Virus record (IMG/VR): IMGVR_UViG_3300032050_000004
Location: 158,070 to 222,069 of that record
DNA: 64,000 nt
Strand: one strand, 5' to 3'
Position numbers and translations under genes: made by a program. The notes under the pieces are model-generated. The model made no database searches and was not told where the DNA came from. It worked only from the letters and a program-made list of their open reading frames with translations. Shown here piece after piece: positions 1,188-52,697 of the stretch. Each line of letters begins with the position of its first letter. Positions within the stretch are counted from its first letter, which is position 1.

Positions 1188-1403
1188 ATGGATACTTTAA
1201 CAACAACAGTAGCAGACAGCATTTCGACAGCAGTAACAAACAATGTTCCTAGTTTCGGAATTTTTGAGCAATTAGCCAATTACGGTGCCTTAGGATTAGC
1301 AGCTTTAGCTTTAGGAGCAGTATGTTGGATATTCATCAAAAGACATTTAGATGAAAAAGACAGATTGCAGAGAAAATTAGATGAAATGGATAAGAACAAA
1401 TGA
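1188..1403 (+). CDS. Small single-TM membrane protein, BhlA-like holin candidate
   Basis: One hydrophobic helix (YGALGLAALALGAVCWIFI) followed by a charged coiled-coil tail. Confidence 0.5.
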   Translation: MDTLTTTVADSISTAVTNNVPSFGIFEQLANYGALGLAALALGAVCWIFIKRHLDEKDRLQRKLDEMDKNK

Positions 1404-1696
1404 TTTTATTACAAGCTTCACCAGTACCATCTTTCGGAATATTTGAAACCCTTACCCAATATGGGGCTTTGGGTGTTATTACATTAGGTTTAGGAGCTGC
1501 TCTATGGTTTTTGTTGAAAAGACAAATAGCTTCAGAAGATAGATTAAAATCTCAAGTTGAGGATTTACAAAAAGAATTAAATAATTACGTCAAAAATGAT
1601 GCTGTAAATATGAAAAATTCTGTAGATAATAATACTAGAGCACTTCAAGATCTAAAAGATATTATTCTTCAATCTTCAATAAAACAGAAAAGATAA
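1400..1696 (+). CDS. Paralogous single-TM membrane protein, holin candidate
   Basis: Shares VPSFGIFExLxxYGALG with the upstream ORF; 4-nt overlap. Confidence 0.5.
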   Translation: MILLQASPVPSFGIFETLTQYGALGVITLGLGAALWFLLKRQIASEDRLKSQVEDLQKELNNYVKNDAVNMKNSVDNNTRALQDLKDIILQSSIKQKR

Positions 1697-2070
1697 TGAG
1701 TAAATCAAATAAAATTTTATATTCAGTTCTAGGAAGTGTAGTTATCCTTGTTGTATTAAATATTTTATTTGCCGGAACAGGACACGTTAAAGTTGTAGAG
1801 TCAAATGTTACTTTGACTGAATCAAACAATAAATTAACACAAGAAAACCAAAAGTTGACAACCGAAAATCAAGAATTGAAAGTTATGACCGATTCGTTGA
1901 TTGTAGCAGGAGATTCACTGAAAAATGAAGTTTCAACTTTAGAAAATAAAGTAGATAACTATGAAACTCAAATTGAACAGGTTGATAACAATAATAGGGC
2001 TAATGATAATTTTTCTAAGCCCTATAAAATCGTTGTGCCAATCACAGAAATATCCGATAGTACGAATTAG
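1696..2070 (+). CDS. N-terminal TM plus coiled-coil protein (inner-spanin-like)
   Basis: TM ILYSVLGSVVILVVLNILFA, then heptad-rich region SNNKLTQENQKLTTENQELK. Confidence 0.45.
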   Translation: MSKSNKILYSVLGSVVILVVLNILFAGTGHVKVVESNVTLTESNNKLTQENQKLTTENQELKVMTDSLIVAGDSLKNEVSTLENKVDNYETQIEQVDNNNRANDNFSKPYKIVVPITEISDSTN

Positions 2071-2482
2071 TGGCAAGGATACTGTTGTTGTAATGACAGT
2101 AAAACAAGCCGATGCAATCAATTTAAGATTGCAAAAAATGCAATCACAATTAGATAGTTTAAAGAAAGTTGTAGAAGAAAAGGATTTGGCTTTAAAAAGC
2201 AATAAATCATGTGATTCTTTAGAAACAAAATTTCAAGATATGTCTCACGGACCAACTTTTATTTATAATTATAAAAATGATATATATACTTTAGATTTAA
2301 GTTTATATAAGATTAAATTAAATAATCTTGGTAGGGTTAAACTTAAAAAAATGACCAGATGGGAGATTGGGAGATATTTTGAACTTTTAAATGGTAACTC
2401 TAATAATACAATTGATTGGAAGGAGACATTCAGAGATTATAATTTACCCTTGATAGAAGACAATAAATTGCTACAATTCTAA
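1961..2482 (+). CDS. Secreted coiled-coil protein overlapping the upstream gene (possible outer-spanin partner)
   Basis: Signal-like N-terminus ending KSLC-Q; overlaps the 3' end of 1696-2070 in another frame. Confidence 0.4.
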   Translation: MKLKLNRLITIIGLMIIFLSPIKSLCQSQKYPIVRISGKDTVVVMTVKQADAINLRLQKMQSQLDSLKKVVEEKDLALKSNKSCDSLETKFQDMSHGPTFIYNYKNDIYTLDLSLYKIKLNNLGRVKLKKMTRWEIGRYFELLNGNSNNTIDWKETFRDYNLPLIEDNKLLQF

Positions 2483-2487
2483 AATTT

Positions 2488-3894
2488 ATGAAAAATTTTA
2501 TTTTTTTAGTTTTTTTATTTACATTATTATTTAATTCTTTATTTGGTCAAATACCTACAAGATTAATAGTAAATCCGGGTTTTGAACAACCTTCATTAGG
2601 TTGTACCAATTGTTATAACTTATTTCCAGTAGCTAGTGTTCCCGGTTGGAAAACTACAGATCCAACTGCTGTAATAGAAATTTGGGGTACTGGTTTTCAA
2701 AGCAAAACTTCACGTTCAGGAATTCAATTTGCTGAAATAAATGCGAACAATTCAGCTTTTTTATATCAAGAGTTATGTTTAGCTCCCAATGAAGTTGTTA
2801 ATTATTCTATTTGGTATTTGAAAAGGACTACAAATACAGAACAGATGAGAGCACAATTGACTGAATTAAATAATACTGTTATATCTCAATCTGTAGTTTA
2901 TACAGCAACAAATAGTTGGGTTAATTATACGGGCACTTTGACAAATAATGGTACAGGAGGTTTAAAAAGAATAGGTTTTGTTGCTGTTACTGGTGGATCT
3001 ACAGGTAACTTGATTGATGATATTACTATATCATTAAAACCAATAATTAGTCTAAAAAACTTTACGCCTTCTAGACAAAATGAAGGTGTTCAAACAAATT
3101 TAATTTTAATTGTAAATGGTACATTGACATCTCCGGCAACAATTAATTTAAATTTAACGGGTACTGCCACTTATCCAAATGATTTTACAATAGGTAATCC
3201 TAGCAGAGGGACAATTTCAATTAATTCAGGAAATATAACTTTAAATCTGCCATCTGGAGATTATAATCCAAATTTAAACTCTGGAACCAATCTAGGTGAA
3301 ATATCAATTCCGATAACAGGGTTGACAGATGGAATCAATGAACCAAGTGAAACAATTACATATACTCTTTCATCTGTATCAGGAGGTGGAATCAACTTTC
3401 CACTTGTTGCTGGTCTAAATGGTATAGGAGCAAATTGTTCAACATATATAGGCTCTGTCACGGATACAATAAATAATTTTTCACCACTACCAATACAATT
3501 ACTTTATTTCTTGGGATTTGTGAAAAATGAAAAGGTTGAACTTAACTGGAAAACTGCTAGTGAAATAAATAATGATTATTTTACTGTTTATGAATCTAAC
3601 AATTTAAATGATTTAAATGAATTAATTAGGATAGATGGTGCAGGAAATTCAAATTTTCCTAGAGAATATTCCTGTGTTGATTTAACTCCATCAAAATATT
3701 ATAAATTATGTCAAACAGATTATGATGGTAAATATGAATGTTTCGATTGGATTTCAGTTAATTTAAATAGTAAGGAAGACCCAATATATAGAATTTATGA
3801 TGTTTTCGGAAGAGAAACCAGCTTGGATCACGAAGGAGTAATAATCATAGTGGATGAGAGAGGAAAAGCACAAAAAATTTTAATTAAAAAATAA
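2488..3894 (+). CDS. Secreted Bacteroidota-type surface protein with T9SS-cargo-like C-terminus
   Basis: Signal peptide ending LFG-Q; CBM-like IVNPGFEQP domain; Calx-beta/Ig-like middle; PLPIQLLYF...LNWKTASEINNDYF motif; terminal IYDVFGRE...KILIKK. Confidence 0.65.
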   Translation: MKNFIFLVFLFTLLFNSLFGQIPTRLIVNPGFEQPSLGCTNCYNLFPVASVPGWKTTDPTAVIEIWGTGFQSKTSRSGIQFAEINANNSAFLYQELCLAPNEVVNYSIWYLKRTTNTEQMRAQLTELNNTVISQSVVYTATNSWVNYTGTLTNNGTGGLKRIGFVAVTGGSTGNLIDDITISLKPIISLKNFTPSRQNEGVQTNLILIVNGTLTSPATINLNLTGTATYPNDFTIGNPSRGTISINSGNITLNLPSGDYNPNLNSGTNLGEISIPITGLTDGINEPSETITYTLSSVSGGGINFPLVAGLNGIGANCSTYIGSVTDTINNFSPLPIQLLYFLGFVKNEKVELNWKTASEINNDYFTVYESNNLNDLNELIRIDGAGNSNFPREYSCVDLTPSKYYKLCQTDYDGKYECFDWISVNLNSKEDPIYRIYDVFGRETSLDHEGVIIIVDERGKAQKILIKK

Positions 3895-3910: not shown

Positions 3911-4432
3911 TTGTTAGATAAATTAAATATAGTGAAAGATAATCATTTAATGTGTGGTTTTGAATCAATTAAGGATTTGGTAAAAAGTGCTTTTGGATTA
4001 GACCATATTTATACAAACACAGTAATCGCTTCAATAGGAGCTATATCAACATTTATAACATCATATATATATGATGATGCTCAAGCAATTTATGTATTAC
4101 TCGGGTTTATAGCTTTTGATTCTTTGACAGGAATTTTAAAAGCTTTTAAACAAAATATATTTTCTTCAGCCAAATTACCCAGAATATTAGTTATTATGGT
4201 ATTGTATGTTTCTTTGTTGAGTTTGGGTTGGAATTTGGCAAAAGTTGACGATATATTTAGTTGGTTACCGGGAACACTTTATTTTGGTTTTATTAGCACA
4301 CTTGTAATTTCTATCATAGAAAACCTTCATGCTTTAAATGTAATTTCTGATGAAATATATAATCACATGAAGAAAAAAATGAAATTAGTCCAAGAAATAT
4401 TTTTTGGGAAAGGTAAGTCAAGAAACGATTAA
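3911..4432 (+). CDS. Phage holin (toxin-secretion/phage lysis holin family-like); start may be ATG 3950
   Basis: Several TM segments with FIAFDSLTGILKAFK...SSAKL and LVISIIENL motifs typical of this holin family. Confidence 0.65.
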   Translation: MLDKLNIVKDNHLMCGFESIKDLVKSAFGLDHIYTNTVIASIGAISTFITSYIYDDAQAIYVLLGFIAFDSLTGILKAFKQNIFSSAKLPRILVIMVLYVSLLSLGWNLAKVDDIFSWLPGTLYFGFISTLVISIIENLHALNVISDEIYNHMKKKMKLVQEIFFGKGKSRND

Positions 4433-7936: not shown

Positions 7937-9634
7937 ATGCCAATTCCCCCAAATAAAATAAAATACAGCACTTCTCAAGTAAATAATGCAGTTAAGGCTA
8001 AAAATTTTGCACTGGGAATTAATTCTCTTGCAGCATACGGTCCAACTAGCTCAACAGGTTTTTGGAATGGCATAACTCCAAAAGCTAGTGGATATACTAT
8101 TTATGTTAATAAAATTTCTCAAGGACCATCAATATTTTGTCCGGGAAATGATTTAGAATTTATTACACTGACAAATTATATATCAGGAATTAATCATACA
8201 ACATTTAGCCAAGCTGCAGCTTGGTATGTTGGACAATCAGATATAATATGTGTCAATAAAGATTATCCAGACATAGTAACAAACGGATTAAGATTAATGG
8301 TTGATTCTAATTTTTTACCCTCATACTGTGGAAGCGGAACAACTTGGACTGATTTAAGTTATAGTGGATTCAATGTTACTTTATTAAACTCTCCAACATA
8401 TGTTTTATCAGGTAGAAGTTCATATATAAATTTTGCTTCTTCAAGTAGTAATTATGCAACTTTTAATGATTTAGGTAATTTAAATAATTTTACAGTTGAA
8501 GTTTGGGCTAAACAAAATTCTACTCCTGTTTCAAATGCTTATCCTACATTTATAACTAATACTTTTCCCGGACCTTCAGGAAATTATGTAAATTATGCTA
8601 TAGGATATTTAAATGCTCCTTGGGATGGTAAAATATATGGAGGATTTTTTAATGGATCTTGGCAATTACCATCAGCTGGCTTTACACCCACAACAGACCA
8701 ATGGTATCATTATTCAGTAACCTATAATGGCTCACAATTATTTTTTTATGTTGATGGTAAATATTATTCTTCCGCATCAACTTTGACAACCGCCCTATCT
8801 TCTGGTGCCGGTGGTAGATTAATGAGAAGATGGGATACTACAGATTATATTGATGGTAATTTGTTAAATTCTAAAATTTATAATAGATCTTTAAATTCAA
8901 CAGAAATTCTACAGAACTATAATGCTCATGCAGTTCCAGTTGGAGTTGAAACTAATGGATTAATTCTTAATCTAGATGCAGGTAATGTTTTATCTTACCC
9001 TCAAATCGGAACATTATGGAAAAGCACAGTTTCATCTGTTCAGAATAATGGTACTTTGACAAATGGGCCAACATTTAATTTATCTAATGGTGGAAGCATT
9101 GTATTTGATGGTGCAAATGATTATGTTTCATTACCAGCAAACTTTTTCAACCACGATGCGGGAACACCTTTTAGTGTATCTATTTGGTTTAAAACAACTA
9201 CAGCTGGAGGAACTTTATTTGGACAACAAAATACAACAAACCCTTCTTCTGCCTCGGGTTATGTTCCTGCTATCTATATTAATTCTTCTGGAAAAATAGT
9301 TACATCTTGTTTTTGGGGTGGATCAGTATCAAATTCAACAACTTCAGTTACTTCTGTTAATGATGGTAATTGGCATAATATTGTTGTAACATTCGCATCA
9401 ACATCACATAAAACATATTTAGATAATAATTTGATTGGTACTATTTCTAAAACACAAAATAATTATTCAGCGACTTATTATTATTTTTTAGGAGCAGGCT
9501 ATAGTGCAGCTTGGACAGGTGCTAATGGTTTTTATTTCAATGGAAATATAGCTTATGCTTCATTTTATAATACTGAATTAACATCAACACAAGTTAATCA
9601 AAATTATCAATCACTAAATTATAGATTTATATAA
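7937..9634 (+). CDS. LamG/concanavalin-A-like lectin-domain virion or tail protein (two LamG domains)
   Basis: FTVEVW, WYHYSVTYNGSQLFFYVDG, IVFDGANDYV, WHNIVVT and EILQNYNA motifs, repeated twice. Confidence 0.8.
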   Translation: MPIPPNKIKYSTSQVNNAVKAKNFALGINSLAAYGPTSSTGFWNGITPKASGYTIYVNKISQGPSIFCPGNDLEFITLTNYISGINHTTFSQAAAWYVGQSDIICVNKDYPDIVTNGLRLMVDSNFLPSYCGSGTTWTDLSYSGFNVTLLNSPTYVLSGRSSYINFASSSSNYATFNDLGNLNNFTVEVWAKQNSTPVSNAYPTFITNTFPGPSGNYVNYAIGYLNAPWDGKIYGGFFNGSWQLPSAGFTPTTDQWYHYSVTYNGSQLFFYVDGKYYSSASTLTTALSSGAGGRLMRRWDTTDYIDGNLLNSKIYNRSLNSTEILQNYNAHAVPVGVETNGLILNLDAGNVLSYPQIGTLWKSTVSSVQNNGTLTNGPTFNLSNGGSIVFDGANDYVSLPANFFNHDAGTPFSVSIWFKTTTAGGTLFGQQNTTNPSSASGYVPAIYINSSGKIVTSCFWGGSVSNSTTSVTSVNDGNWHNIVVTFASTSHKTYLDNNLIGTISKTQNNYSATYYYFLGAGYSAAWTGANGFYFNGNIAYASFYNTELTSTQVNQNYQSLNYRFI

Positions 9635-9941: not shown

Positions 9942-12900
9942 ATGTCAGATATTTCAAATCAACTTATTAAAGATTCATTTAATTATGTATTACAATCTGA
10001 TTTGGATACTGGTATTGTTTATAGAATTGGTGGTGACATTCCAGAAAACCCTCAATTTACATCAGGACTGACGGTTTCAAATGGTTTTAAATTCGAAGAT
10101 TCCCCACAAGATGGTTATTTTCTTAAATCTGATGCTTTCGGAAATGCTTCTTGGGCATTAGTAACAGGATCAGGTACTTCTGGATCAGCTGGTTCGTCAG
10201 GAAGAAACGGAAGTTCAGGCTCATCAGGAAGTTCTGGAATAAATGGTAGTTCAGGTTCTTCGGGCATAAATGGTAGCTCTGGTTCGTCTGGAACGTCTGG
10301 TACAAATGGAAGTTCCGGGAGTCGAGGTTCTAGCGGTAGTTCTGGTTCTTCTGGCTCATCTGGAACATCAGGTATCAATGGTCTTGATGGTTCTAATAGC
10401 TTAAGATGGTTTTATAGAACTGATCTAGAAGCTCCAAATAACCCCGGAAACCAAAATTTTATACTAAATGAAGTCAAGTTTAGTACTGTAACTAGAATTA
10501 GCATAAGTACACTAGATATAAACTCGAATGATTCATATGATTGGTTAGAGACTATTGATGTTTTAAAAAGGGTTACAGGAAACTTAGTTTATTTTAAAAT
10601 TACGAATGTCACAAATCCATCAAATTATGGATTATACACAATTGCTGGCTCTACAGATCATGGAACTTATTTTGATTTTGATCTTACTTTAATAAATAGC
10701 GATTTAAGTACCATACAAGGAGAACAATTCTCTATATCATATGTATTTAATGGATTAAATGGTACTTCAGGAACTTCGGGGGAATCTGGAAGTTCTGGAT
10801 CTTCTGGTGTATCAGGAACTGATGGTTCAGCTGGAACTTCTGGTACTTCTGGTACTTCTGGCAACAACGGAAATGATGGAACATCTGGTTCATCAGGAAT
10901 AAATGGTAGCTCTGGAATAAACGGAAGTTCTGGTATAAATGGTAGTTCTGGAGTTAATGGTAGTTCAGGTTCATCAGGAGGAGCAGGATTAAGTGGAAGT
11001 TCTGGATCATCTGGTGCAAACGGAAGTTCTGGTTCATCAGGTATTTCTGGAGAATCTGGTTCATCTGGTAGTTCTGGTACATCAGGATCATCTGGTACAG
11101 GTTTTACTGCCATTCAAAGTCCTGCTAATTATAGAGTATTAGTATCTGATAACACAACAGATACTGCAATTGCTCAATCTGGACTTACATATGATGGTCA
11201 ACAATTATATATTTCTGGCAATACATTTATTACAGGCACAATTTCAGCTACAACTTTTTATAGTTTAGTAGGTGATATAGAAAATTATGTCACAGTTGGT
11301 CTCAGTGGTAGTAATGTAGATTTTAATTCAATAAAATTAGCAGTCGATAGTATTACTGGAGCAACTGAAGATAATCCATGGGAAGTTAGAGTTTATCCGG
11401 GCTTGTACTACGAAGATCCAATTATTATGAAATCTTGGATCACAGTAAGAGGAAGCAATAGTACTGCAACAATTGTAGAAGCAAGTAATTCTGCGAATAC
11501 AGTTTTTTTCATGGCAGATCAATCTATGATTTCAGACATGCAAATTCAAGGTTCTACTGCTTCTGGAACATCTGCTATCATATATTCTTCTTCGACCACT
11601 CCACAATTAAATGCAATTTCATATGTAGAAAACGTCAGATTCGGCGAAAACTACACACACGCTAAAACAGTCGGTACTGGTGGTGGAAATTGCATAATGC
11701 AATGTTCTAATGTAAAATATGGTGGTTATCCTTTTACTATCGGCTTTGTAGTAACAAATGACGGTACTGGTATTGGCAGAATGCAACTAAGAAACGTCAC
11801 TTCAACTAATGGTGGTGTAACTACTACAACAGGATTGATTTTTGCAAAAGCTGATGCACCAAGCTGTGCTTTTATTGTTAATGGTTGTTTATTAACAAAA
11901 GCTGTCGGTGCTGCAGCTGGTACCGGTTTCTGGGTTGAAAATGGAGCTTCTTTAAGATTGACTGCTGTAAATTTCCAAAGATGGGCTACAGCTATTTATG
12001 CTCCTAATACAGGATCATCCCCTAGTATATATGGAAGTGCTTTAAATTTTGAAAATAACACAAAGGATATAATTGTAGAACATCCTTCAGCAACTGGACA
12101 TATAGATGGAGCTGATACATTTTTAAAAACCGAAATACCAATTAATGCTCCTTTATACGAAGTTAATCAAGACCCAAAAAGAATTATAGTTGCAAAAAAA
12201 GGAGGAGATTTTTCATCTATTAAATCTGCTGTAGATTGGATTACAGGAAGTTCTAGCAGTAATAGGTTTGTGGTTTCTGTCGGTCCGGGTGAGTTTTTTG
12301 AAAATGAAATTGATCTTACATCTAAACCTTATGTCAGTATTGTAGGTAGCAACATACAAACCACACAAATTTTTCCTAATTCTACTTCACAGCATATTAT
12401 AAAATTAGGAATAAATAATGAAATATCTTTTTTAAGTTTATCAGGTGCTGGTTCTAGTTATTCTGCTATATATGTTGACGATATAGGGGATTTTGCACAA
12501 GCTCACAAAATTTCTGTTTACGATTGTGATATAGGTGTATGGGTAAAATCTTCCACCCAAGACACAAAATTCTATGGTGAATACATGGATTTTAATGGAG
12601 ATTTTACCTATGGAGTTCGTGTAGATGCGACAAATTCATTTTCGGCATTAGCCAATATGGAAAACTATTATCTTTTTCCAACCTATGATAATGTGATTGG
12701 TAATAGTGCAGATGGTTTAGGTGCAAGACTTAATTTATACACAGGTGAATTTGAAGGTGCTCAATTGACTGGTTCTACAGCAATAAAACTTTCAGATCAA
12801 GCTGAACTTGAAGCTGGCAATTTAGATATTCAAGATTGGAATAAGTCGTTTGAAATTCCTAATTCCGGTGGTGGTCCAGTTGCTAGGATTGTAGGTTCAA

Positions 12901-14207
12901 TGATTCACAATTCTATCACCTACGATATTGAAATTCTAAACCCTGCTGCATCCTTTAGATATCAAGGTATATCTGATCATACTAAAATATATAATGTAAG
13001 CAATAATGTGTTTTGGAATTTTCTTGATGATGTAGATGGGGAAAATGATATTACAAGAAAAATATCAGTTACATTTTCAGATGGAACACATACGGATGCT
13101 TCAACATTAATTTTTCAAAGTAGTTCAATGGGCCTTCTAAACGGAGGTACAATTACAATAGTTAGTGGTTTAACAATAAACACCACATCAGGGTTTGGAT
13201 ATGTAGCAGATCAAATTGATAATAGTATTATAAAAAGATATGATTGGAATAATAATCAAATAACATTGTCTGCAAATACAAATAATTATATTTATATTTC
13301 CAATAATGGTTCTTTAGTCGCTAATTCTGGATTACCTGATCCATTCTATAGTATAATAATGGGTAGAGTTGTTACAAATTCAACAGGCATTGAATTAATT
13401 GATCAATCACCATATAATGCACAACATACAGCAAATTTATTATCTTCATTTAACAGGCAAGCACTTGGCCCAGTATTTTCAACTGGTTCAATTGTAACTA
13501 CTGGAACTACAGCATTTACATTGGATGTTAGTACAGGAAACTATTGGTTATCAGAAAATAATTTTTTACCTACAGGTGGAACATCAATAAATTTTACTCA
13601 GTATTGGAATAATGGATCAGGATTCACAACAAGTGCTACAACATATGTTAATAGTAGTCAATTCAATCCAAATCAAAATTCACTATCTTCTCTTACAAGC
13701 TCTTATTACACAAAACATACTTTGTATGTAGTTGGCGATGGAATAAATGAAGAATATTTTTTAGTTCTTGGTCAAAACGAGTATGCTACTTTAATTGAAA
13801 CAGAAGACGCACCTTTACCTATACCTCCCGATTTTTTTACAGATGGTGTAGTTTCTATAGCATCAATTTATATTAAAGATGGTGAATCAGGAATTGTTCA
13901 AATTGAAGATATAAGACCTGTAATTGGTTTTAAATCCAGTGGTGTAAATGCCACATCAGTTCATGGAAATCTTTTAGGTCTTACATCAGATGATCATCAA
14001 CAATACATTTTAGTTGATGGTGGTAGGCAGATGACAGGAGATCTTGGAATTGGTGGCTTTGATATATATAATATAAATCAAATAACTTCTACTGGCATTA
14101 CAACAAACACACTTAATGTAGCTAATTTATCTAATGATGAATCTCTAACGAGATATGTTGTTGTAGATGTTTCTGGAAACACATTTTATAAAAACGAAGG
14201 TCAGTAA
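9942..14207 (+). CDS. Large tail-fibre/tailspike-like protein with Gly-X-Y (Ser/Thr) repeats and two beta-helix-like domains; stops at an in-frame TAA
   Basis: GSS/GTS/GIN triplet blocks; two beta-helix cap motifs (DFNSIKLAVDSI...VYPGLY and DFSSIKSAVDWI...VGPGEF). Confidence 0.8.
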   Translation: MSDISNQLIKDSFNYVLQSDLDTGIVYRIGGDIPENPQFTSGLTVSNGFKFEDSPQDGYFLKSDAFGNASWALVTGSGTSGSAGSSGRNGSSGSSGSSGINGSSGSSGINGSSGSSGTSGTNGSSGSRGSSGSSGSSGSSGTSGINGLDGSNSLRWFYRTDLEAPNNPGNQNFILNEVKFSTVTRISISTLDINSNDSYDWLETIDVLKRVTGNLVYFKITNVTNPSNYGLYTIAGSTDHGTYFDFDLTLINSDLSTIQGEQFSISYVFNGLNGTSGTSGESGSSGSSGVSGTDGSAGTSGTSGTSGNNGNDGTSGSSGINGSSGINGSSGINGSSGVNGSSGSSGGAGLSGSSGSSGANGSSGSSGISGESGSSGSSGTSGSSGTGFTAIQSPANYRVLVSDNTTDTAIAQSGLTYDGQQLYISGNTFITGTISATTFYSLVGDIENYVTVGLSGSNVDFNSIKLAVDSITGATEDNPWEVRVYPGLYYEDPIIMKSWITVRGSNSTATIVEASNSANTVFFMADQSMISDMQIQGSTASGTSAIIYSSSTTPQLNAISYVENVRFGENYTHAKTVGTGGGNCIMQCSNVKYGGYPFTIGFVVTNDGTGIGRMQLRNVTSTNGGVTTTTGLIFAKADAPSCAFIVNGCLLTKAVGAAAGTGFWVENGASLRLTAVNFQRWATAIYAPNTGSSPSIYGSALNFENNTKDIIVEHPSATGHIDGADTFLKTEIPINAPLYEVNQDPKRIIVAKKGGDFSSIKSAVDWITGSSSSNRFVVSVGPGEFFENEIDLTSKPYVSIVGSNIQTTQIFPNSTSQHIIKLGINNEISFLSLSGAGSSYSAIYVDDIGDFAQAHKISVYDCDIGVWVKSSTQDTKFYGEYMDFNGDFTYGVRVDATNSFSALANMENYYLFPTYDNVIGNSADGLGARLNLYTGEFEGAQLTGSTAIKLSDQAELEAGNLDIQDWNKSFEIPNSGGGPVARIVGSMIHNSITYDIEILNPAASFRYQGISDHTKIYNVSNNVFWNFLDDVDGENDITRKISVTFSDGTHTDASTLIFQSSSMGLLNGGTITIVSGLTINTTSGFGYVADQIDNSIIKRYDWNNNQITLSANTNNYIYISNNGSLVANSGLPDPFYSIIMGRVVTNSTGIELIDQSPYNAQHTANLLSSFNRQALGPVFSTGSIVTTGTTAFTLDVSTGNYWLSENNFLPTGGTSINFTQYWNNGSGFTTSATTYVNSSQFNPNQNSLSSLTSSYYTKHTLYVVGDGINEEYFLVLGQNEYATLIETEDAPLPIPPDFFTDGVVSIASIYIKDGESGIVQIEDIRPVIGFKSSGVNATSVHGNLLGLTSDDHQQYILVDGGRQMTGDLGIGGFDIYNINQITSTGITTNTLNVANLSNDESLTRYVVVDVSGNTFYKNEGQ
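10168..10390 (+). repeat. Gly-Ser-Ser/Thr collagen-like coding repeat block 1
   Basis: Degenerate 9-nt periodic ggt-tca-tct/gga-agt-tct; boundaries approximate. Confidence 0.9.
10760..11100 (+). repeat. Gly-Ser-Ser/Thr collagen-like coding repeat block 2
   Basis: Same triplet repeat; boundaries approximate. Confidence 0.9.
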
Positions 14208-35024: not shown

Positions 35025-35025
35025 G

Positions 35026-35099
35026 TAGTCCCGAGGCGATTCGAACGCCTGACCGTCTGCTTAGAAGGCAGATGCTCTATCCAGCTGAGCTACAGGACC
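35026..35099 (-). tRNA. trnR: tRNA-Arg(UCU), no encoded CCA
   Basis: GGTCCTGTAGCTCAGCTGGATAGAGCATCTGC-CTTCTAA-GCAGACGGTCAGGCGTTCGAATCGCCTCGGGACTA. Confidence 0.95.
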
Positions 35100-35105
35100 A
35101 ATTAG

Positions 35106-35177
35106 TAGCGGGAAGAGGATTCGAACCTCTGACTTCCAGATTATGAGTCTGGTGACCTACCTCTGGTCCATCCCGCA
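35106..35177 (-). tRNA. trnM: tRNA with CAU anticodon (Met/fMet/Ile2 identity unresolved), no encoded CCA
   Basis: TGCGGGA...CCAGA-CTCATAA-TCTGG...GGTTCGAATCC...TCCCGCTA; U1-U72 mismatch. Confidence 0.88.
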
Positions 35178-35194
35178 GTATTTTTTTCTTATTA

Positions 35195-35224
35195 CAAAAA
35201 TAGTAATAAAAAATTAAAAACAAA
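35195..35224 (-). promoter_or_regulatory. Bacteroidota sigma-A-type promoter upstream of tRNA-CAU
   Basis: TTTG (35221-35224), 18 nt, TATTTTTG (35195-35202). Confidence 0.55.
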
Positions 35225-35249
35225 TTTTATAATAAAATTATAAGATTTG

Positions 35250-35323
35250 CTCTCCTGACTGGGCTCGAACCAGTGACCCATTGATTAACAGTCAATTGCT
35301 CTGACCTACTGAGCTACAGGAGA
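35250..35323 (-). tRNA. trnN: tRNA-Asn(GUU), no encoded CCA
   Basis: TCTCCTGTAGCTCAGTAGGTCAGAGCAATTGA-CTGTTAA-TCAATGGGTCACTGGTTCGAGCCCAGTCAGGAGAG. Confidence 0.95.
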
Positions 35324-40005: not shown

Positions 40006-40168
40006 AGAAATCATCATCATAATAAGTTCTAAATTTTTTCTTTCTTTTATAACCACATCTTGCACAAATAGATTCTTCAGAATCTTTATGGAATCTTACG
40101 GTTCCAAATTTATGACCTTTGTACCAACAGAAAATAAGAAATTTTATTTGGTTATATATTTTACGCAT
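39995..40168 (-). CDS. 57-aa Cys/His zinc-ribbon-like protein (below ORF-track cutoff)
   Basis: FCWYKGHKF...ICARCGYK. Confidence 0.5.
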   Translation of the reverse strand: MRKIYNQIKFLIFCWYKGHKFGTVRFHKDSEESICARCGYKRKKKFRTYYDDDFFIY

Positions 40169-40304
40169 TTATTTTCTGTTCTAAATATTTTAATAAAATT
40201 TTGAAGCTGAAATTATTCTCTATATAAACCATATAGAGATTAATTAAATCAAAATGACTATTTGTATCAGGACATAATCCAACTAAATGAAGTAAAAAAT
40301 CCAT
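40161..40304 (-). CDS. 47-aa hypothetical protein (below ORF-track cutoff)
   Basis: MDFLLHLVGLCPDTNSHFDL...; coupled overlaps with both neighbours. Confidence 0.45.
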   Translation of the reverse strand: MDFLLHLVGLCPDTNSHFDLINLYMVYIENNFSFKILLKYLEQKINA

Positions 40305-40453
40305 TATTTTTTTTGTATTTCTAAATTTTTCTTATCTACTCGGATAAGTGAATTTTCATGAATAATTAGACAATAAGAATCAAATTCTTTTTGAATTTCA
40401 ACAAATTCACCTTTTTTCAGTCCGAGAAGTGGGTATTTTACTTTTGCTTTCAT
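40304..40453 (-). CDS. Small SH3-like hypothetical protein (start probably ATG 40453)
   Basis: MKAKVKYPLLGLKKGEFVEIQKEFDSY. Confidence 0.5.
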   Translation of the reverse strand: MKAKVKYPLLGLKKGEFVEIQKEFDSYCLIIHENSLIRVDKKNLEIQKK

Positions 40454-40751
40454 TTTGTTTTGTTTTGTTTTTTGAATTAAAACGTTTTTCAACAGAATTA
40501 GTTACAAATTTAAACACTTTTTTTGAATTTAAAGTCAAAAACCCTGAATTTAACTGTAATTTTTTAAATTTAATAATTTCGCGGACAATTTCAACCCCTT
40601 TTTTGGAATTATGCTCATAAAAAAAATTATTTTTTTTTCCTAACCCAGTTCTAACTTTTGGAACATAATCGTTATCAATATAATGTTCGACTAATTTTTT
40701 GCTGAATTCGTCCAAATTATTATAAAATTCTTTTATAACACTTTTCTGCAT
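40407..40751 (-). CDS. Hypothetical protein
   Basis: 114-aa ORF. Confidence 0.45.
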   Translation of the reverse strand: MQKSVIKEFYNNLDEFSKKLVEHYIDNDYVPKVRTGLGKKNNFFYEHNSKKGVEIVREIIKFKKLQLNSGFLTLNSKKVFKFVTNSVEKRFNSKNKTKQNESKSKIPTSRTEKR

Positions 40752-40819
40752 GTATTAAAATTATAAAATAAAAAGTTTATTTCAAACTATTTATAAATTA
40801 GAAATAATTAAAATTTATC

Positions 40820-41122
40820 ATGGGAAATACAGCAGCTAATTATCAAGCAATTCCATTGTTAACCAACGGAAATTACAATTTTTATCCGTTCGATTCTACT
40901 GGCTATAGAACAGGAACTACTGTTCATCAGTTGTTTTGTTTGACCGCAGGATCTATAGTCATTTATCCATTGAATGGTCCATCATTTACTTGGACTCCAA
41001 CGGTTAATAGTACATCTATAGATATTTTAGTATCAGGGGTAACAGTTTCTTCTGGAACTTGGGTAGCTTTCAAATCAAAATATGACACAAATCCTTTCTA
41101 TAGTAAAGGTGCTAATCAATAA
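40820..41122 (+). CDS. Small beta-rich virion protein
   Basis: First gene of the neck operon; TATTTAT at 40788-40794. Confidence 0.6.
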   Translation: MGNTAANYQAIPLLTNGNYNFYPFDSTGYRTGTTVHQLFCLTAGSIVIYPLNGPSFTWTPTVNSTSIDILVSGVTVSSGTWVAFKSKYDTNPFYSKGANQ

Positions 41123-41133
41123 TTTAAATTTAA

Positions 41134-42309: not shown

Positions 42310-42312
42310 TAA

Positions 42313-42870
42313 ATGGCAGATTTACCATCAAATAATAACGAACTCAGAAACGAGAGGGTACCCAAACCAGAGGAGGCTAAGGAATTAGACGTAAACAAAA
42401 AAGGTATAAGATTATTTTTTGGAGAAAAAGAAAGACGTTTATTAGATGGGATGGGTAGGGAAATTGTAAATGATATTTTATTAGAAAGTTTTCTACTTTA
42501 TAGAATTGATTATCGAACTACCAAAACACATAGAGTTTACGGTGAGGCAAAACAAAAAGTTTATGAAGCACCTATTGAAATTTTCGGAAGAGTAACAGTC
42601 GAAACAGATTCTCCAAGTTATTTTGCTCCGGGTGGATTAATTAGAGAAGGTTTAGGCAAGTTTACAGCACATGTGTATTTGACTCACTTAGAGGAAATTA
42701 ACGCTACTATTCGTATGGGTGATTTTATATATCACAAAGGAAACTACTATGAGATTATTGATAACGGTGCGTCAGATATTAATAATAAATACGCTTTTGG
42801 ATCAGATAAATTCTTCTATATAACAATAAAAGGAGTCGAGGTTAACTCTGACGTATTCCAAGCCCGTTAA
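42313..42870 (+). CDS. Head-tail connector (T4 gp14-like)
   Basis: VYGEAK...YEAPIE, IRMGDFIYHKGNYYEI. Confidence 0.7.
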   Translation: MADLPSNNNELRNERVPKPEEAKELDVNKKGIRLFFGEKERRLLDGMGREIVNDILLESFLLYRIDYRTTKTHRVYGEAKQKVYEAPIEIFGRVTVETDSPSYFAPGGLIREGLGKFTAHVYLTHLEEINATIRMGDFIYHKGNYYEIIDNGASDINNKYAFGSDKFFYITIKGVEVNSDVFQAR

Positions 42871-50336: not shown

Positions 50337-52697
50337 ATGGCACAAACAGTATTCGTTTCACCGGGAGTATACACAAGAGAGCAAGATTTCACATTCTTCG
50401 CTTCAAGAATAGGTTTAACCAGACTTGGATTGGTCGGTTTAACGCCCAAAGGTCCTGCTTTTGAACCAATAAAAATTGCTTCATCAGAAGGGTTTTCTAA
50501 TAGATTTGGTAATCCAAACTCTGATTATCCTTTAACATATGTTGCATACAGATTTTTATCACAATCATCTGAATTGACTCTTACAAGAGTACTTGGTAAG
50601 GTTGGTTATTCAGGTTCAAATGCATGGTTGATAACTTCGGAGGCTTCTGCATATGAGTGGAGTGGTACTACGCTATCTGTTATCAAAAGTAAAAAAGATC
50701 CGAATACTGGAAATTTTTATTATACTGGTTCTACAGATTTAACATTATTTGGAACAAGTACTTTATTAAATTCATTTGGAATTTCTGGAACAACAGGACC
50801 TATCACTGGATTTTCTAGTTCAGCTATAACTGTATCACTTAATGAAGCTGATGATACTTATATTTTGAAATTAGTGGGTCAAACCCCTAAAAGTTTTGAT
50901 GGTGATACTGGTTTTTATGTAGATTCAATTTTCCCACACTTAATTGGTCAATGTGCTACATATACAGCATCAACAATTGCTGGTAACATAGGAACAGCAT
51001 TGACAACTTCATTTGAATTTAAGTCAAATGATGCATATAAGGATTATACAGAACAATTCAGGAATTCTATAACTCCAATGATTGTTGGTCAGGTTGTAGG
51101 AAGTACGGTTAGGGATTTGTTTAAAGTTGAAACTATATCTGATGGTGATGCTTCTGCTGCAGAAATAAAAGTTTCTTTTGTAAACTTAGATCCTGCCAAT
51201 AATACATTTGATTTAGTTGTAAGAAGATTTTTCGACACTGATGCAAGTACTTTGACTAGTGGTAGATTAGAATTGTTCCGTCAATGTACAATGGATAGAA
51301 CTAAGCCAAACTTTGTTGGTAAAATGATAGGTACAACGGATGAAATATATCCAAGACAATCAAATTACATAACAATAACTTTAGCAGATAATTTCCCACA
51401 AGATCAAGTTCCTGCTGGTTTCAGAGGTTATACATTAAGAACTGGCACAACTGCTAATGTTCCTCAAATTCTTTATAAAACAAGTTACCTTTCTTCAGAT
51501 ACTGTTTCTAAAACATATTTAGGTTGTTCTGAATTAGCATATACTGGTTTAACATCTGTTGTTGTAGGTGTAAAAAATGCAATACAAACTTTAGAAAAAG
51601 ATATTTTTAAATTCCAAGGTTCTGATTCAACAGATGTAGCTACTGTTAAAGGTTTTCATATGGAAAGCACAGCTCCAACATCTACTTTCTATACTGGTAT
51701 TGAAACAAGTTTGACTGATTATGAAAAACCAGAAAGAAAATTCACAGTAGCTCCTTTTGGTGGATTTGATGGATGGCAACCTTATACAATTCCAACCTTC
51801 ACTAATGATGTTGCTGATGAAGACAATTTAGACGCATTTAAACTTTGTGTTGATTTAATGGCACCACCTGAGTCTGTGGATATAAATGTATTTGCTGCTC
51901 CAGATGTAAATTATTCAGATAATTTGAATGCTGTTAATTATTGCTTGACTATGGTTGAAGATAGAGCAGACTCTATATATGTAATAGAAAGTCCAAGATT
52001 GTCTACTGATTCTGCAAAAGCAACCGCTTCACAAGCTGCTGCTGCTGTAGAAGAATCTGGTATTGATTCTAGTTATGCAGCTACATATTGGCCTTGGATT
52101 CAAATTGAAGACCCAACAAGTAATAAATTCATTTATATTTCTCCAACTTCAGAAGTTGTAAAAAATATAGCTTTAACTGATAATATTGCATATTCTTGGT
52201 ACGCACCAGCAGGTCTAAATAGAGGTCAAGTGACTTGTGTTAGAGCTGACATAAATCTCTCTAGAGATGATCGTGATACTTTGTATGATGCAAATATTAA
52301 TCCGATTAATACAGTTGCTCAACAAGGTGTAACAATTCAAGGTCAGAAAACTATGCAAATTGAACAATCTGCTTTGGATAGAATAAATGTTAGAAGATTG
52401 TTGTTACAAGTTAGAAGATTAGTTGCAGCTGCTTCACAGACATTGTTATTCGAACCAAACGATCAAACAGTGCGTGACCAATTCTTAGCAAAAGTTGAGC
52501 CTATATTGTTACAAATACAAAATCAGAGAGGTATATTCGCATATAAAGTTACAGTAGATGATTTTAATACAGCTACTGAAGATTCTGATAGAAATACTTT
52601 AACTGGTAAAATAGCAATTAAACCTACACCGGCTCTTGAATTTATAGATCTTACATTCCAAGTTCTTCCTACTGGAGCAAATTTTGAAGATTTCTAA
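50337..52697 (+). CDS. Tail sheath protein 1 (T4 gp18-like)
   Basis: SPGVYTREQD, GPAFEP, YAATYWPWI, WYAPAGLNRG, DRINVRRLL, LFEPND, PTPALEFI. Confidence 0.95.
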   Translation: MAQTVFVSPGVYTREQDFTFFASRIGLTRLGLVGLTPKGPAFEPIKIASSEGFSNRFGNPNSDYPLTYVAYRFLSQSSELTLTRVLGKVGYSGSNAWLITSEASAYEWSGTTLSVIKSKKDPNTGNFYYTGSTDLTLFGTSTLLNSFGISGTTGPITGFSSSAITVSLNEADDTYILKLVGQTPKSFDGDTGFYVDSIFPHLIGQCATYTASTIAGNIGTALTTSFEFKSNDAYKDYTEQFRNSITPMIVGQVVGSTVRDLFKVETISDGDASAAEIKVSFVNLDPANNTFDLVVRRFFDTDASTLTSGRLELFRQCTMDRTKPNFVGKMIGTTDEIYPRQSNYITITLADNFPQDQVPAGFRGYTLRTGTTANVPQILYKTSYLSSDTVSKTYLGCSELAYTGLTSVVVGVKNAIQTLEKDIFKFQGSDSTDVATVKGFHMESTAPTSTFYTGIETSLTDYEKPERKFTVAPFGGFDGWQPYTIPTFTNDVADEDNLDAFKLCVDLMAPPESVDINVFAAPDVNYSDNLNAVNYCLTMVEDRADSIYVIESPRLSTDSAKATASQAAAAVEESGIDSSYAATYWPWIQIEDPTSNKFIYISPTSEVVKNIALTDNIAYSWYAPAGLNRGQVTCVRADINLSRDDRDTLYDANINPINTVAQQGVTIQGQKTMQIEQSALDRINVRRLLLQVRRLVAAASQTLLFEPNDQTVRDQFLAKVEPILLQIQNQRGIFAYKVTVDDFNTATEDSDRNTLTGKIAIKPTPALEFIDLTFQVLPTGANFEDF

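What the first reader, a model, noticed from the sequence alone, without database searches (positions are those of the whole stretch)
2488..3894. Phage-encoded type IX secretion cargo-like protein inside the lysis cassette
Seen: Sec signal ending before Gln, CBM-like and Ig/Calx-beta-like domains, the PLPIQLLYF...W.TASE.NNDYF block and a short YDxxGR...K..IKK tail. Established: this architecture is typical of Bacteroidota T9SS substrates with a type A CTD. Inference: the phage may use the host T9SS to decorate the cell surface (receptor masking, aggregation) or has captured a host gene. The CTD looks shortened and may be degenerate.
Basis: partly seen in the sequence, partly recalled or inferred. 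Interest (0 to 1): 0.62.

Follow-up and report, generated by a model that had tools for sequence, protein, structure and literature searches.

The report
Phage secreted protein with mini-CTD
A freshwater jumbo phage of Bacteroidota encodes an exported sugar-binding-type protein whose tail is a conserved 40-residue remnant of the type IX secretion signal; this short form is typical of phages, rare in bacteria, and could be a natural minimal secretion signal.

Summary
Window 2488..3894 (+) is a real 468-aa gene under purifying selection. It has a Sec signal ending before Gln, a CBM-type jelly roll (aa 21-185), a Calx-beta domain (186-332), an FN3-like domain holding the PLPIQLLYF...NNDYF block (333-427), and a 41-aa tail (428-468).

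The tail is not a type A CTD by any model (no PF18962/TIGR04183 hit at E<=1) or by fold: it has three strands, not a seven-strand sandwich. It is nevertheless homologous to one. Sister-clade bacterial orthologues (38-46% identity) carry a full PF18962 CTD, and the phage tail aligns to their motif D and E strands, lacking the PNP strands and a middle segment.

The short tail is not private decay. FN3-like domain plus 42-47-aa tail (G-x8-G-x8-G-x3-K skeleton) is a tight module: 74 of 80 viral ORFs versus 1 of 39 bacterial ORFs (p=1e-23). It sits on many passengers, nearly all with a signal peptide followed by Gln. The same phage also encodes two full-CTD proteins.

The gene's place (four small membrane/exported genes upstream, then a holin or M15 peptidase) is conserved across phages, but this phage's amidase lies about 57 kb away.

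T9SS dependence remains an inference: a PorV complex prediction gave only weak support. Verdict: new variant of a known kind.

The parts
2488..2547 (+). Signal peptide, aa 1-20, with predicted signal peptidase I cleavage before Gln21 (the Bacteroidota 'Q-rule')
   Evidence: Sequence. Predicted helix 2-16 followed by a low-confidence stretch 16-22. Q21 invariant in 40 homologues. dN/dS about 1.3.
2548..3042 (+). D1: CBM-type beta-jelly roll, aa 21-185; the most constrained part of the protein
   Evidence: VIA-align: 4bj0 Z 14.8, CBM22 Z 13.1, Kgp K1 adhesin Z 12.2. dN/dS 0.035 with 93% identity at dS 1.1. Stand-alone relatives carry PEP-CTERM signals.
3043..3483 (+). D2: Calx-beta-type sandwich, aa 186-332 (loop 304-312 at low confidence)
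   Evidence: 3gin Z 10.8, 3ead Z 10.6, 3fq4 Z 10.4. Relatives carry PF03160. dN/dS 0.16.
3484..3768 (+). D3: FN3-like 'pre-CTD' domain, aa 333-427, holding the PLPIQLLYF...W.TASE.NNDYF...YYKLCQTDYDG block
   Evidence: FN3 matches at Z 9-10 over model residues 1-96. No Pfam family. Found in 86 of 201 Bacteroidota genomes. dN/dS 0.23.
3769..3891 (+). Short tail ('mini-CTD'), aa 428-468: a polar linker then three strands, with skeleton G441 / G450 / G459 / K463. Homologous to the motif D strand and the last two strands (motif E) of a type A CTD.
   Evidence: Alignment with full-CTD orthologues. hhalign E 3e-4, probability 40%. Motif statistics. No PF18962 hit. dN/dS 0.58.
3911..4432 (+). Holin directly downstream (the true start may lie a few codons further in, as in L010)
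   Evidence: PF05105 E 3.6e-9, 37.2 bits against a cut-off of 22.2. phrog_199 holin. Same position in L010.
1188..1403 (+). First gene of the conserved upstream string: 71-aa one-TM protein
   Evidence: Sequence. Conserved in L010 and, by gene size and order, in the P0013 and P0014 phages.
1400..1696 (+). 98-aa one-TM plus coiled-coil protein, paralogue of the previous gene
   Evidence: Shared VPSFGIFExLxxYGALG motif. Conserved in L010.
1696..2070 (+). 124-aa protein with an N-terminal TM segment and a coiled coil; i-spanin-like topology
   Evidence: Sequence. Weak Rz-like and LysB hits only (phrog_739 E 0.0034, TIGR03495 E 0.034).
1961..2482 (+). 173-aa exported protein (signal peptide ...SLC|QSQ) overlapping the previous gene by 110 nt
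   Evidence: The long form, its signal peptide and the overlap are conserved in L010. No family hit.

Best explanation
The gene encodes a phage-made envelope or surface protein. Shown: it has a Sec-type signal peptide ending before Gln, a strongly constrained CBM-type glycan-binding-like head (D1), a Calx-beta spacer (D2), an FN3-like stalk (D3) and a 41-residue tail. The tail is what remains of a type A T9SS C-terminal domain after loss of the N-terminal strands (including the PNP motif) and of a middle segment. Shown: D3 plus short tail is a conserved, portable C-terminal module typical of Bacteroidota phages, carried by many different exported passengers. Inferred: after Sec export the tail, which keeps the motif D strand (reported to be needed for PorM binding) and the motif E strand with its near-terminal Lys (reported to contact PorV), serves as a minimal T9SS targeting signal. 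The protein would then be passed through the host T9SS and displayed on, or released from, the infected cell. Inferred: because it sits in a conserved string with membrane proteins and a holin or endolysin, it is probably made late, and its glycan-binding head acts on the host surface or envelope around the time of lysis, for example by masking receptors on infected cells and debris or by adhesion. The ligand is unknown.
For: Architecture and export signal. Homology of the tail to the CTD: the whole-protein alignment with orthologues bearing PF18962 at the equivalent position; profile-profile alignment to the D and E strands; the short-tail profile aligns across a full CTD in L052. The module is functional, not decaying: fixed length of 42-47 aa; G0 100%, G+9 95%, G+18 88%, K+22 93%; fixed spacing in 50 of 61 distinct viral tails; the same module on unrelated passengers, including a second protein of this phage. 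Virus-typical: 74 of 80 viral against 1 of 39 bacterial ORFs have the short tail, Fisher p = 1.4e-23. At least 62 of 80 viral ORFs have a signal-peptide-like N-terminus and 60 of those have Gln after the hydrophobic core. The phage uses the T9SS route elsewhere: two of its own ORFs carry full PF18962 CTDs at 49 and 40 bits against a cut-off of 27. Bacteria holding the closest full-length orthologues have PorV (445 bits). Literature: the last 22 aa of the HBP35 CTD (motifs D and E) sufficed for T9SS secretion of GFP, the last 13 aa and motif E lysines are required, and D maps to PorM and E to PorV (PMC10202324; bioRxiv 10.1101/483123). Complex test, PorV with D3+tail: ipSAE 0.55 (0.53-0.57), best of 3 controls 0.00, runs agreeing in at least 60% of contacts, partner pLDDT at least 71, verdict 'weak support'. 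D1 relatives elsewhere are attached to other surface-sorting signals (PEP-CTERM; full T9SS CTD), which fits a surface role. Conserved position beside a holin or M15 peptidase.
Against: No HMM recognises the tail. Three strands cannot form the seven-strand sandwich. Cryo-EM shows the translocon recognising the folded CTD by size and shape, with about 1,850 A2 buried, and shows that the conserved motifs mainly specify the fold (PMC10994853). F. johnsoniae type A signals are described as about 100 aa (PMC12618676). The tail is the least constrained mature part in this gene family (dN/dS 0.58, 41 codons, one pair). Four clade members have only about 24 aa after D3, so this passenger can persist with even less tail. 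The complex score lies in the band where passes are more often wrong than right unless the prior was good, and it may reflect memory of solved PorV-CTD complexes. No evidence of expression of the target. Host, ligand and timing are all inferred.
Confidence: 0.45

Rival explanations
1. Periplasmic lysis or envelope accessory. The protein is exported by Sec but stays in the periplasm because the CTD has been cut down. D1 binds an envelope glycan (peptidoglycan, or an LPS or capsule intermediate) and acts together with the neighbouring membrane proteins, holin and endolysin. The conserved tail is a protein-protein contact motif, not a secretion signal.
For: Conserved string of four small membrane or exported genes, this gene, then a holin or a Peptidase_M15_3. 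The tail lacks most of the CTD fold that the translocon recognises. Some clade members have lost nearly the whole tail while keeping D1-D3. D1 is the part under the strongest constraint.
Against: The D3+tail module also sits on many unrelated passengers that are not next to lysis genes, so the module's role does not depend on lysis. A remnant with no sorting role would not be expected to keep fixed length and invariant residues in 61 tails. None of the neighbours has a significant spanin match. This phage's amidases are far away.
Confidence: 0.25
2. T9SS decoy or modulator. The mini-CTD engages PorM or PorV but cannot be handled as a normal substrate. The phage proteins would occupy or retune the host T9SS, for example by lowering display of surface proteins that other phages use as receptors (superinfection exclusion).
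For: The tail keeps just the motifs reported to contact PorM and PorV. It is virus-typical and nearly absent from bacteria. Weak support for a PorV contact. From my own knowledge, not checked here: T9SS and gliding mutants of Flavobacterium are reported to be phage-resistant.
Against: A decoy would not need dozens of different, individually conserved passenger domains or a head domain at dN/dS 0.035. The same phage sends two full-CTD proteins down the same route, which jamming would defeat.
Confidence: 0.1
3. Recently captured host gene in decay, with no role for the phage; the short tail is a broken CTD.
For: Bacterial full-CTD orthologues form the sister clade. No CTD model match. Relaxed constraint on the tail.
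Against: Intact ORF with dN/dS 0.18 overall and 0.035 in D1 at saturating dS. Conserved synteny in phages as distant as 56-57% identity. A monophyletic phage clade of 16 sequences. The phage recurs almost unchanged in lake metagenomes from many studies between 2017 and 2024. The tail motif is conserved across 61 viral proteins.
Confidence: 0.05
4. Virion component: a fibre or decoration protein with Ig-like domains.
For: FN3/Ig-like and CBM-like domains are common on phage particles. Structural neighbours include baseplate and tail-tip proteins. Structural genes lie elsewhere in the window.
Against: A cleavable Sec signal peptide conserved through the whole family and across the module class does not fit assembly in the cytoplasm. 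There is no PHROG structural match. The gene lies with holin and replication genes, not in the structural block.
Confidence: 0.05

Closest known systems
Type A T9SS C-terminal domain (PF18962 Por_Secre_tail / TIGR04183), e.g. the CTDs of RgpB, HBP35 and RemA
   Same: Position at the extreme C-terminus of a Sec-exported, multi-domain Bacteroidota-type protein, after an Ig/FN3-like domain. Orthologues carry the real domain at the same place. The tail keeps the motif D-like strand (h-K-h-h-N/D-x-x-G-Q/R-E-V) and the motif E-like end (G-x3-K plus hydrophobic residues).
   Different: About 41-46 aa instead of about 75-100. Three strands instead of a seven-strand sandwich. No motif A/B (PNP is absent in 61 of 61 viral tails but present in 34 of 38 bacterial ones). 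About 18 residues between the D and E parts are deleted. No HMM match. Virus-typical distribution.
Phage-encoded T9SS cargo reported earlier: 'Cryophage' (Bellas et al. 2020, PMC7468147) and crAss-like contigs (de Jonge et al. 2019, PMC6949934)
   Same: Phages of Bacteroidota that encode exported proteins, often carbohydrate-active or carbohydrate-binding, with T9SS sorting domains and presumed to use the host system. This phage also has two such full-CTD genes.
   Different: Those reports concern full type A sorting domains recognised by standard models. The shortened module, its wide occurrence in viruses and its place in a lysis-gene string were not described in the passages I read.
The HBP35 C-terminal 22-residue minimal signal (Shoji et al. 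2011, as reviewed in PMC10202324)
   Same: A segment holding only motifs D and E, reported as sufficient for T9SS-dependent secretion of GFP. The phage tail is a natural counterpart of that laboratory truncation.
   Different: That is an engineered truncation in P. gingivalis. The sufficiency of such short signals is not general (about 100 aa are needed in F. johnsoniae) and sits uneasily with fold-based recognition by SprA/PorV.
IgSF-CTD arrangement of gingipains and other T9SS cargo
   Same: An Ig-like domain precedes the sorting signal, joined by a polar linker. D3 followed by a CTD is the standard arrangement in 38 of 39 bacterial proteins sampled.
   Different: D3 is an FN3-like family of its own with no Pfam model. 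PorU cleavage in the linker is not shown here.
CBM4/CBM22-type carbohydrate-binding modules and PEP-CTERM or DUF11/Calx-beta surface proteins
   Same: D1 has the fold of these CBMs (Z 13-15) and sequence relatives fused to PEP-CTERM (32-33% identity) or DUF11/Calx-beta. D2 has the Calx-beta fold.
   Different: No Pfam CBM family matches. The ligand and binding site are unknown. A shared fold does not show a shared function.

Membership tests
T9SS type A CTD (PF18962 / TIGR04183) | Match to the family HMM above its cut-off | tested here: not met
   No hit to PF18962 or TIGR04183 at E<=1 for the whole protein. Of 28 D3+tail modules, only one (not the target) gave PF18962 at E 0.028. Positive controls: orthologues P0017, P0018, P0027 and P0035 score 31-38 bits against a cut-off of 27, while P0031 (24.6 bits) falls just below it. 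Two other ORFs of this phage score 49 and 40 bits.
T9SS type A CTD (PF18962 / TIGR04183) | Seven-strand Ig-like beta-sandwich of about 70-100 residues | tested here: not met
   The tail has 41 residues and three predicted strands. No structural match covers it.
T9SS type A CTD (PF18962 / TIGR04183) | Conserved motifs B (PNP), D and E (near-terminal Lys) | tested here: inconclusive
   B is absent. D-like (YDVFGRE, G441) and E-like (G459-x3-K463...KK) motifs are present and align to those of orthologous full CTDs.
T9SS type A CTD (PF18962 / TIGR04183) | N-terminal Sec signal peptide on the same protein | tested here: met
   MKNFIFLVFLFTLLFNSLFG|Q, conserved in type across homologues. Judged from the sequence, as no predictor was available.
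T9SS type A CTD (PF18962 / TIGR04183) | Host possesses a T9SS | tested here: inconclusive
   The host is not identified. The phage encodes full CTD cargo. The Bacteroidota MAGs with the closest orthologues have PorV at about 440 bits against a cut-off of 250.
T9SS type A CTD (PF18962 / TIGR04183) | Secretion depends on the T9SS; the CTD binds PorV/SprA and is removed by PorU | not testable with these tools
   Only a prediction is available: PorV with D3+tail gives ipSAE 0.55 against 0.00 for the best control, verdict 'weak support'.
T9SS type B (TIGR04131) and type C (ChiA-like) CTDs | Match to the family model; a required region of 100 to over 200 aa | tested here: not met
   The NCBIfam scan at E<=1 returned only an irrelevant torA hit. 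I assume, but did not verify, that the library holds the type C model. The tail is far shorter than the regions required for these types.
Phage lysis cassette member | Adjacent to holin, endolysin and spanin genes, with the position conserved | tested here: inconclusive
   A holin is adjacent. Peptidase_M15_3 is adjacent in the P0013 phage. Synteny is conserved. No significant spanin match. This phage's own Amidase_2 ORFs are at G000:C1 103 kb and 132 kb, against 160.5 kb for the target. A lytic function of the protein itself is not shown.
Carbohydrate-binding module (CBM4/22-like) for D1 | Beta-jelly-roll fold with a ligand cleft; family HMM match; glycan binding | tested here: inconclusive
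   Fold met (Z 14.8 and 13.1). No Pfam CBM match. Invariant W54, W66 and W144 plus acidic residues are compatible with a binding site. Binding cannot be tested here.

The most novel reading that the evidence does not exclude
The FN3-like domain plus roughly 35-45-residue tail (h-K-h-h-N-x-x-G-Q-E-V-x3-Y-x-G-h-h-h-x-h-Y-x-D-G-S-x-x-K) is a phage-specific minimal class of T9SS signal. It would be a natural proof that the motif D and E strands alone can route a folded passenger through the T9SS. Many Bacteroidota phages would use it to export a large and varied set of their own proteins to the surface of the infected cell, possibly with a different fate from host cargo, such as no PorU processing or A-LPS anchoring.
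Probability: 0.4. Interest if true: 0.8.

Novelty: new variant of a known kind. Interest (0 to 1): 0.66.

Why it matters
How the T9SS recognises its substrates is unsettled. Truncation work in P. gingivalis says 22 residues (motifs D and E) suffice, whereas cryo-EM and F. johnsoniae work point to recognition of a whole folded domain of about 100 residues. A naturally occurring, strongly conserved signal with only the D and E parts, found on dozens of different phage passengers, gives a ready-made test set for that question. For phage biology it points to a broad and so far unannotated class of exported proteins with which phages of Bacteroidota, including abundant freshwater jumbo phages, may remodel the surface of infected cells. 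If instead the tail does not drive secretion, its tight conservation in viruses still needs an explanation.

Tried and rejected
(1) Pfam, NCBIfam and PHROGs scans of the protein gave no significant family. A profile of 40 homologues found no solved structure by sequence.

(2) Whole-model Foldseek gave only generic multi-sandwich matches. Foldseek on the C-terminal model gave nothing at E<=0.001.

(3) No cultured phage is a close relative. DNA pol III alpha matches are at most 33% identical. The protein itself matches only the D3/tail region in four huge uncultured phages.

(4) Endolysin search in the phage genome: no Peptidase_M15_3, PG_binding_1 or Phage_lysozyme. Amidase_2 is present, but far from the locus.

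(5) Expression: one true metatranscriptome holds a single 237-nt contig at 1612..1848 and nothing on the target. Two 'RNA?' runs are probably DNA. Nothing follows about transcription.

(6) Complex prediction gave 'weak support' only. I treat it as a sign of CTD-likeness, not of binding.

(7) Type B and type C CTDs were considered and rejected.

(8) The direction of gene transfer cannot be decided. The phage and bacterial clades are sisters and the tree's root is at the midpoint, for drawing only. I read the full-size CTD as ancestral from the sister clade and from the 498-aa phage members with 74-aa tails. This is parsimony, not a test.

(9) Ranking caveat: both the viral and the bacterial locus sets are the best matches to a short-tail query or profile, so both lean towards short tails. 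The 152 unlisted viral matches and about 790 unlisted bacterial matches were not measured.

Full report
**The object**

Window 2488..3894 (+) is an open frame of 468 codons in DNA of about 29% G+C. It is a real gene. The protein collection holds a 99%-identical copy and nine relatives of 465-470 aa at 69-76% identity. Against the orthologue in locus L010, dN/dS is 0.18 at dS of about 1.1.

The window is the last 64 kb of a 222,069-bp IMG/VR virus record estimated 87% complete. It carries a gp23-type capsid gene, two tail-sheath genes and collagen-repeat fibre genes, DNA polymerase III alpha and three tRNAs. This is a T4-like jumbo myovirus with no close cultured relative. The locus recurs almost unchanged in lake and freshwater metagenomes from many studies. 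One 2024 contig spans 3.3 kb with six differences.

**Anatomy**

An AlphaFold2 model built on 40 homologues (mean pLDDT 84.6), together with VIA-align against 48,161 PDB chains, gives five parts.

| Part | Residues | What it is | Evidence |
|---|---|---|---|
| Signal peptide | 1-20 | Sec-type, ending ...SLFG before Gln21 | Sequence |
| D1 | 21-185 | CBM-type jelly roll | CBM4-2 4bj0 Z 14.8, rmsd 3.0, 151 aligned; CBM22 Z 13.1; Kgp K1 adhesin Z 12.2 |
| D2 | 186-332 | Calx-beta sandwich | 3gin Z 10.8; 3ead Z 10.6; 3fq4 Z 10.4 |
| D3 | 333-427 | FN3-type sandwich | Z 9-10; confirmed on a separate model of the C-terminal 136 residues, pLDDT 88.5 |
| Tail | 428-468 | Polar linker and three short strands | |

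It is not part of a sorting domain.

Constraint is very uneven across the protein (window versus L010):

| Part | dN/dS | aa identity |
|---|---|---|
| Signal peptide | about 1.3 | 30% |
| D1 | 0.035 | 93% |
| D2 | 0.16 | 75% |
| D3 | 0.23 | 64% |
| Tail | 0.58 | 37% |

**Is the tail a type A CTD?**

Neither Pfam PF18962 nor TIGR04183 (nor any other T9SS sorting model) matches at E<=1. The tail has three strands rather than the seven-strand sandwich that defines the domain (PMC10202324).

By descent it is. The next relatives (537-551 aa, 38-46% identity over 79-98% of the query) have the same D1-D2-D3 architecture followed by a PF18962 domain (for example P0017 residues 460-531, 37.9 bits). 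One of them lies in an ordinary bacterial chromosome region of a Bacteroidota MAG. Others lie in freshwater Bacteroidia MAGs.

In the alignment the phage tail lines up with the CTD in two pieces. IYDVFGRE aligns with the motif D strand, and GVIIIV...GKAQKILIKK with the last two strands. The YPNPN strands and about 18 residues in the middle are missing. A profile-profile comparison of 26 short tails with 20 full CTDs gives the same register (E 3e-4, probability 40%). This is weak on its own but agrees with the orthology. The short-tail profile also aligned straight across a full bacterial CTD (L052).

A maximum-likelihood tree puts the phage-type proteins (16 rows, tails of about 24, 46 or 74 aa) in one clade (99/99). 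This clade is sister to the bacterial full-CTD clade (18 rows, 97/96), with DUF11/Calx-beta proteins outside. I therefore read the full CTD as ancestral and the tail as a reduction within the phage lineage. The direction of transfer itself is not resolved.

**The short tail is a class, not an accident**

- Among 91 word-search hits that contain D3, the length after D3 is bimodal: 44-51 aa in 26-27 proteins (none with PF18962), or 80-100 aa in 57 proteins (mostly with PF18962).
- D3 plus short tail sits on unrelated N-terminal domains (P0037-P0039, P0042 and others). One of these is a second, 370-aa protein of this same phage.
- A scan of IMG/VR with the module alignment found 232 relatives. 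Of the best 80 loci, 74 ORFs have tails under 50 aa (61 distinct sequences) and 6 have CTD-sized tails.
- The same profile in 203 Bacteroidota genomes found D3 in 87 of them, with at least 940 matches and often 20 or more per genome. Of the 39 best loci, 38 have 70-119 aa after D3 and only one (L038, between TonB-receptor-like genes) has the short tail. Fisher p = 1.4e-23.
- Both sets are the top matches to a short-tail query or profile, so the ranking bias is shared. The unlisted matches were not measured.

The viral tails are tightly conserved. Counting from the invariant Gly of the motif D turn, the consensus is K/R(-6, 94%), N/D(-3, 96%), G(0, 100%), Q/R(+1), E/D(+2), V/I(+3, 95%), Y(+7, 70%), G(+9, 95%), Y/W(+15), D/N(+17), G(+18, 88%), K(+22, 93%). 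The G0-to-G+18 spacing is identical in 50 of 61 tails. Motif B (PNP or PSP) is absent in 61 of 61 viral tails but present in 34 of 38 bacterial tails.

The target is a somewhat divergent member that keeps the skeleton G441, G450, G459 and K463. At least 62 of the 80 viral ORFs start with a signal-peptide-like segment, and 60 of those have Gln just after it. This fits the Bacteroidota habit of Gln at the mature N-terminus, which I cite from my own knowledge of the 'Q-rule' literature. So these are exported proteins of Bacteroidota phages, with many different passengers on one common C-terminal module.

**Does the phage use the T9SS at all?**

Yes, by inference. Its genome holds two ORFs with genuine full CTDs (49 and 40 bits against a cut-off of 27). 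One is a zinc-metalloprotease-like protein with the motif HEQGHLLGSRH followed by Ig-like repeats. The other is a 182-aa exported protein. The MAGs with the closest orthologues encode PorV (about 440 bits against a cut-off of 250).

Phage-encoded T9SS cargo has been reported before: 'Cryophage' (PMC7468147) and crAss-like contigs (PMC6949934). The concept is therefore not new.

**Can such a short tail work?**

The literature is divided.

- For: the last 22 residues of the HBP35 CTD, covering motifs D and E, sufficed for T9SS secretion of GFP. The last 13 residues and the motif E lysines are required. Motif D was linked to PorM binding and motif E to PorV (PMC10202324; bioRxiv 10.1101/483123).
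- Against: cryo-EM of substrate-bound translocons shows the whole folded CTD buried (about 1,850 A2) in a size- and shape-matched pocket of SprA and PorV. The motifs mainly specify the fold, and only the near-terminal Lys makes a conserved contact (PMC10994853). F. johnsoniae type A signals are described as about 100 aa (PMC12618676).

A complex prediction of mature PorV from the MAG G001 with D3+tail scored ipSAE 0.55 (three runs, 0.53-0.57) against 0.00 for the best of three controls. The runs agreed in at least 60% of their contacts, and partner pLDDT was at least 71. The tool rates this 'weak support': the mark was reached by 58 of 80 solved complexes and 2 of 110 mismatched pairs, but at 0.60 or under by only 7 of those 80 and by both mismatches that passed. 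It may also reflect memory of solved PorV-CTD complexes. I take it as showing CTD-likeness, no more.

**The neighbourhood**

Upstream lie four co-oriented genes:
- Two paralogous one-TM proteins (71 and 98 aa).
- A 124-aa protein with an N-terminal TM segment and a coiled coil.
- Overlapping it by 110 nt, a 173-aa protein with a signal peptide.

Downstream is a PF05105 holin (E 3.6e-9, above the cut-off), and then DNA pol III alpha on the other strand.

The same string is conserved in a 75%-identical phage (L010). In a 57%-identical one, a Peptidase_M15_3 gene takes the holin's place. It is also conserved in a 55%-identical one.

The gene is thus a stable member of a module that includes lysis genes. 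However, the upstream genes give only weak spanin-like hits (E 0.003-0.03). This phage's Amidase_2 ORFs lie 28 and 57 kb away. Other carriers of the D3+tail module are not next to lysis genes. 'Inside the lysis cassette' is therefore only partly supported. It suggests late expression rather than a lytic activity.

**What D1 may do**

D1 has the CBM4/22 fold, invariant Trp54, Trp66 and Trp144, and several invariant acidic residues. Searched alone, it finds 211-269-aa bacterial proteins, among them PEP-CTERM-anchored proteins of cyanobacteria (32-33% identity over 95% of D1). The Atlas neighbours of D1-D2 are DUF11/Calx-beta, CBM_4_9 and Cleaved_Adhesin surface proteins. All scored under 0.9, so they are leads only.

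The same head is therefore joined in different phyla to three different surface-sorting signals, which fits a role at the cell surface. The ligand is unknown.

**Verdict**

- Best explanation (0.45): a Sec-exported, glycan-binding-type phage protein whose reduced CTD still targets it to the host T9SS for display or release around the time of lysis.
- Main rival (0.25): it stays in the periplasm as an envelope or lysis accessory, and the tail is an interaction motif.
- Less likely: a T9SS decoy (0.1), a decaying captured gene (0.05), a virion part (0.05).

It is not a member of PF18962/TIGR04183 as those families are defined. It is a derived, virus-typical variant of that signal.

Noticed in passing
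window 1696..2070 (+) and 1961..2482 (+): A 124-aa protein with an N-terminal TM segment and a coiled coil overlaps by 110 nt a 173-aa protein with a signal peptide (...SLC|QSQ). The overlap, the long form and the signal peptide are conserved in L010. The arrangement recalls overlapped i-/o-spanin pairs, but there is no canonical lipobox and no significant spanin match.
   Followed up: partly
window 1188..1403 (+) and 1400..1696 (+): Two adjacent paralogous one-TM proteins sharing VPSFGIFExLxxYGALG. They could be a holin/antiholin-type pair. Only phrog_9715 (unknown function, E 7e-5) matches.
   Followed up: no
G000:C1 about 40115-42570 (-) (L004) and 66749-67295 (-) (L003), outside the window: The same phage encodes a zinc-metalloprotease-like protein (HEQGHLLGSRH, followed by Ig-like repeats) and a 182-aa exported protein. 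Both have full PF18962 CTDs above the cut-off. A 466-aa exported protein and a thymidylate-synthase-like gene lie beside the latter.
   Followed up: partly
G000:C1 about 68530-69642 (-) (L002 1480..2592 -; P0121): A second D3+short-tail protein of this phage (370 aa) with a different N-terminal domain and a signal peptide ending before Gln.
   Followed up: partly
D3 domain: window 3484..3768, and loci L028-L066: The FN3-like domain 'LPVELLxF..W.TxSExNNDYF..YYRLxQxDxDG' has no Pfam or NCBIfam model. It nevertheless occurs at least 940 times in 86 of 201 sampled Bacteroidota genomes, almost always directly before a type A CTD. It is an unannotated 'pre-CTD' domain family.
   Followed up: partly
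L038 (G089:C213) 1492..2862 (-): The one bacterial example found of the short tail: a 456-aa Cys-rich exported protein between TonB-dependent-receptor-like genes in a 6.1-Mb genome. The form is therefore rare in bacteria but not exclusive to viruses (or this contig may be mis-binned).
   Followed up: partly
window 50337..52697 (+) and 52751..55390 (+): Two adjacent tail-sheath paralogues (786 and 879 aa), both matching Phage_sheath_1 and Phage_sheath_1C.
   Followed up: no
window 9942..14207 (+) and 61219..63999 (+, runs off the end): Two large collagen-triple-helix-repeat proteins. The second explains the rise in G+C to 0.45 at the end of the window. A LamG/Laminin_G_3 protein (7937..9634) precedes the first.
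   Followed up: no
window 35025..35323 (-): A cluster of three tRNA genes: Arg(tct), Met(cat) and Asn(gtt).
   Followed up: no
window 1612..1848: A freshwater metatranscriptome (X20) holds one 237-nt contig, 100% identical, across the junction of the 98-aa and 124-aa genes. Nothing from that run lies on the target gene. DNA carry-over cannot be excluded.
   Followed up: partly
P0011-P0013, P0016 (phage-clade relatives): Four relatives end about 24 aa after D3, right after the motif D-like 'LGQEIK', so they have lost the motif E part as well. Whether these are true ends or assembly or gene-calling artefacts was not checked.
   Followed up: no
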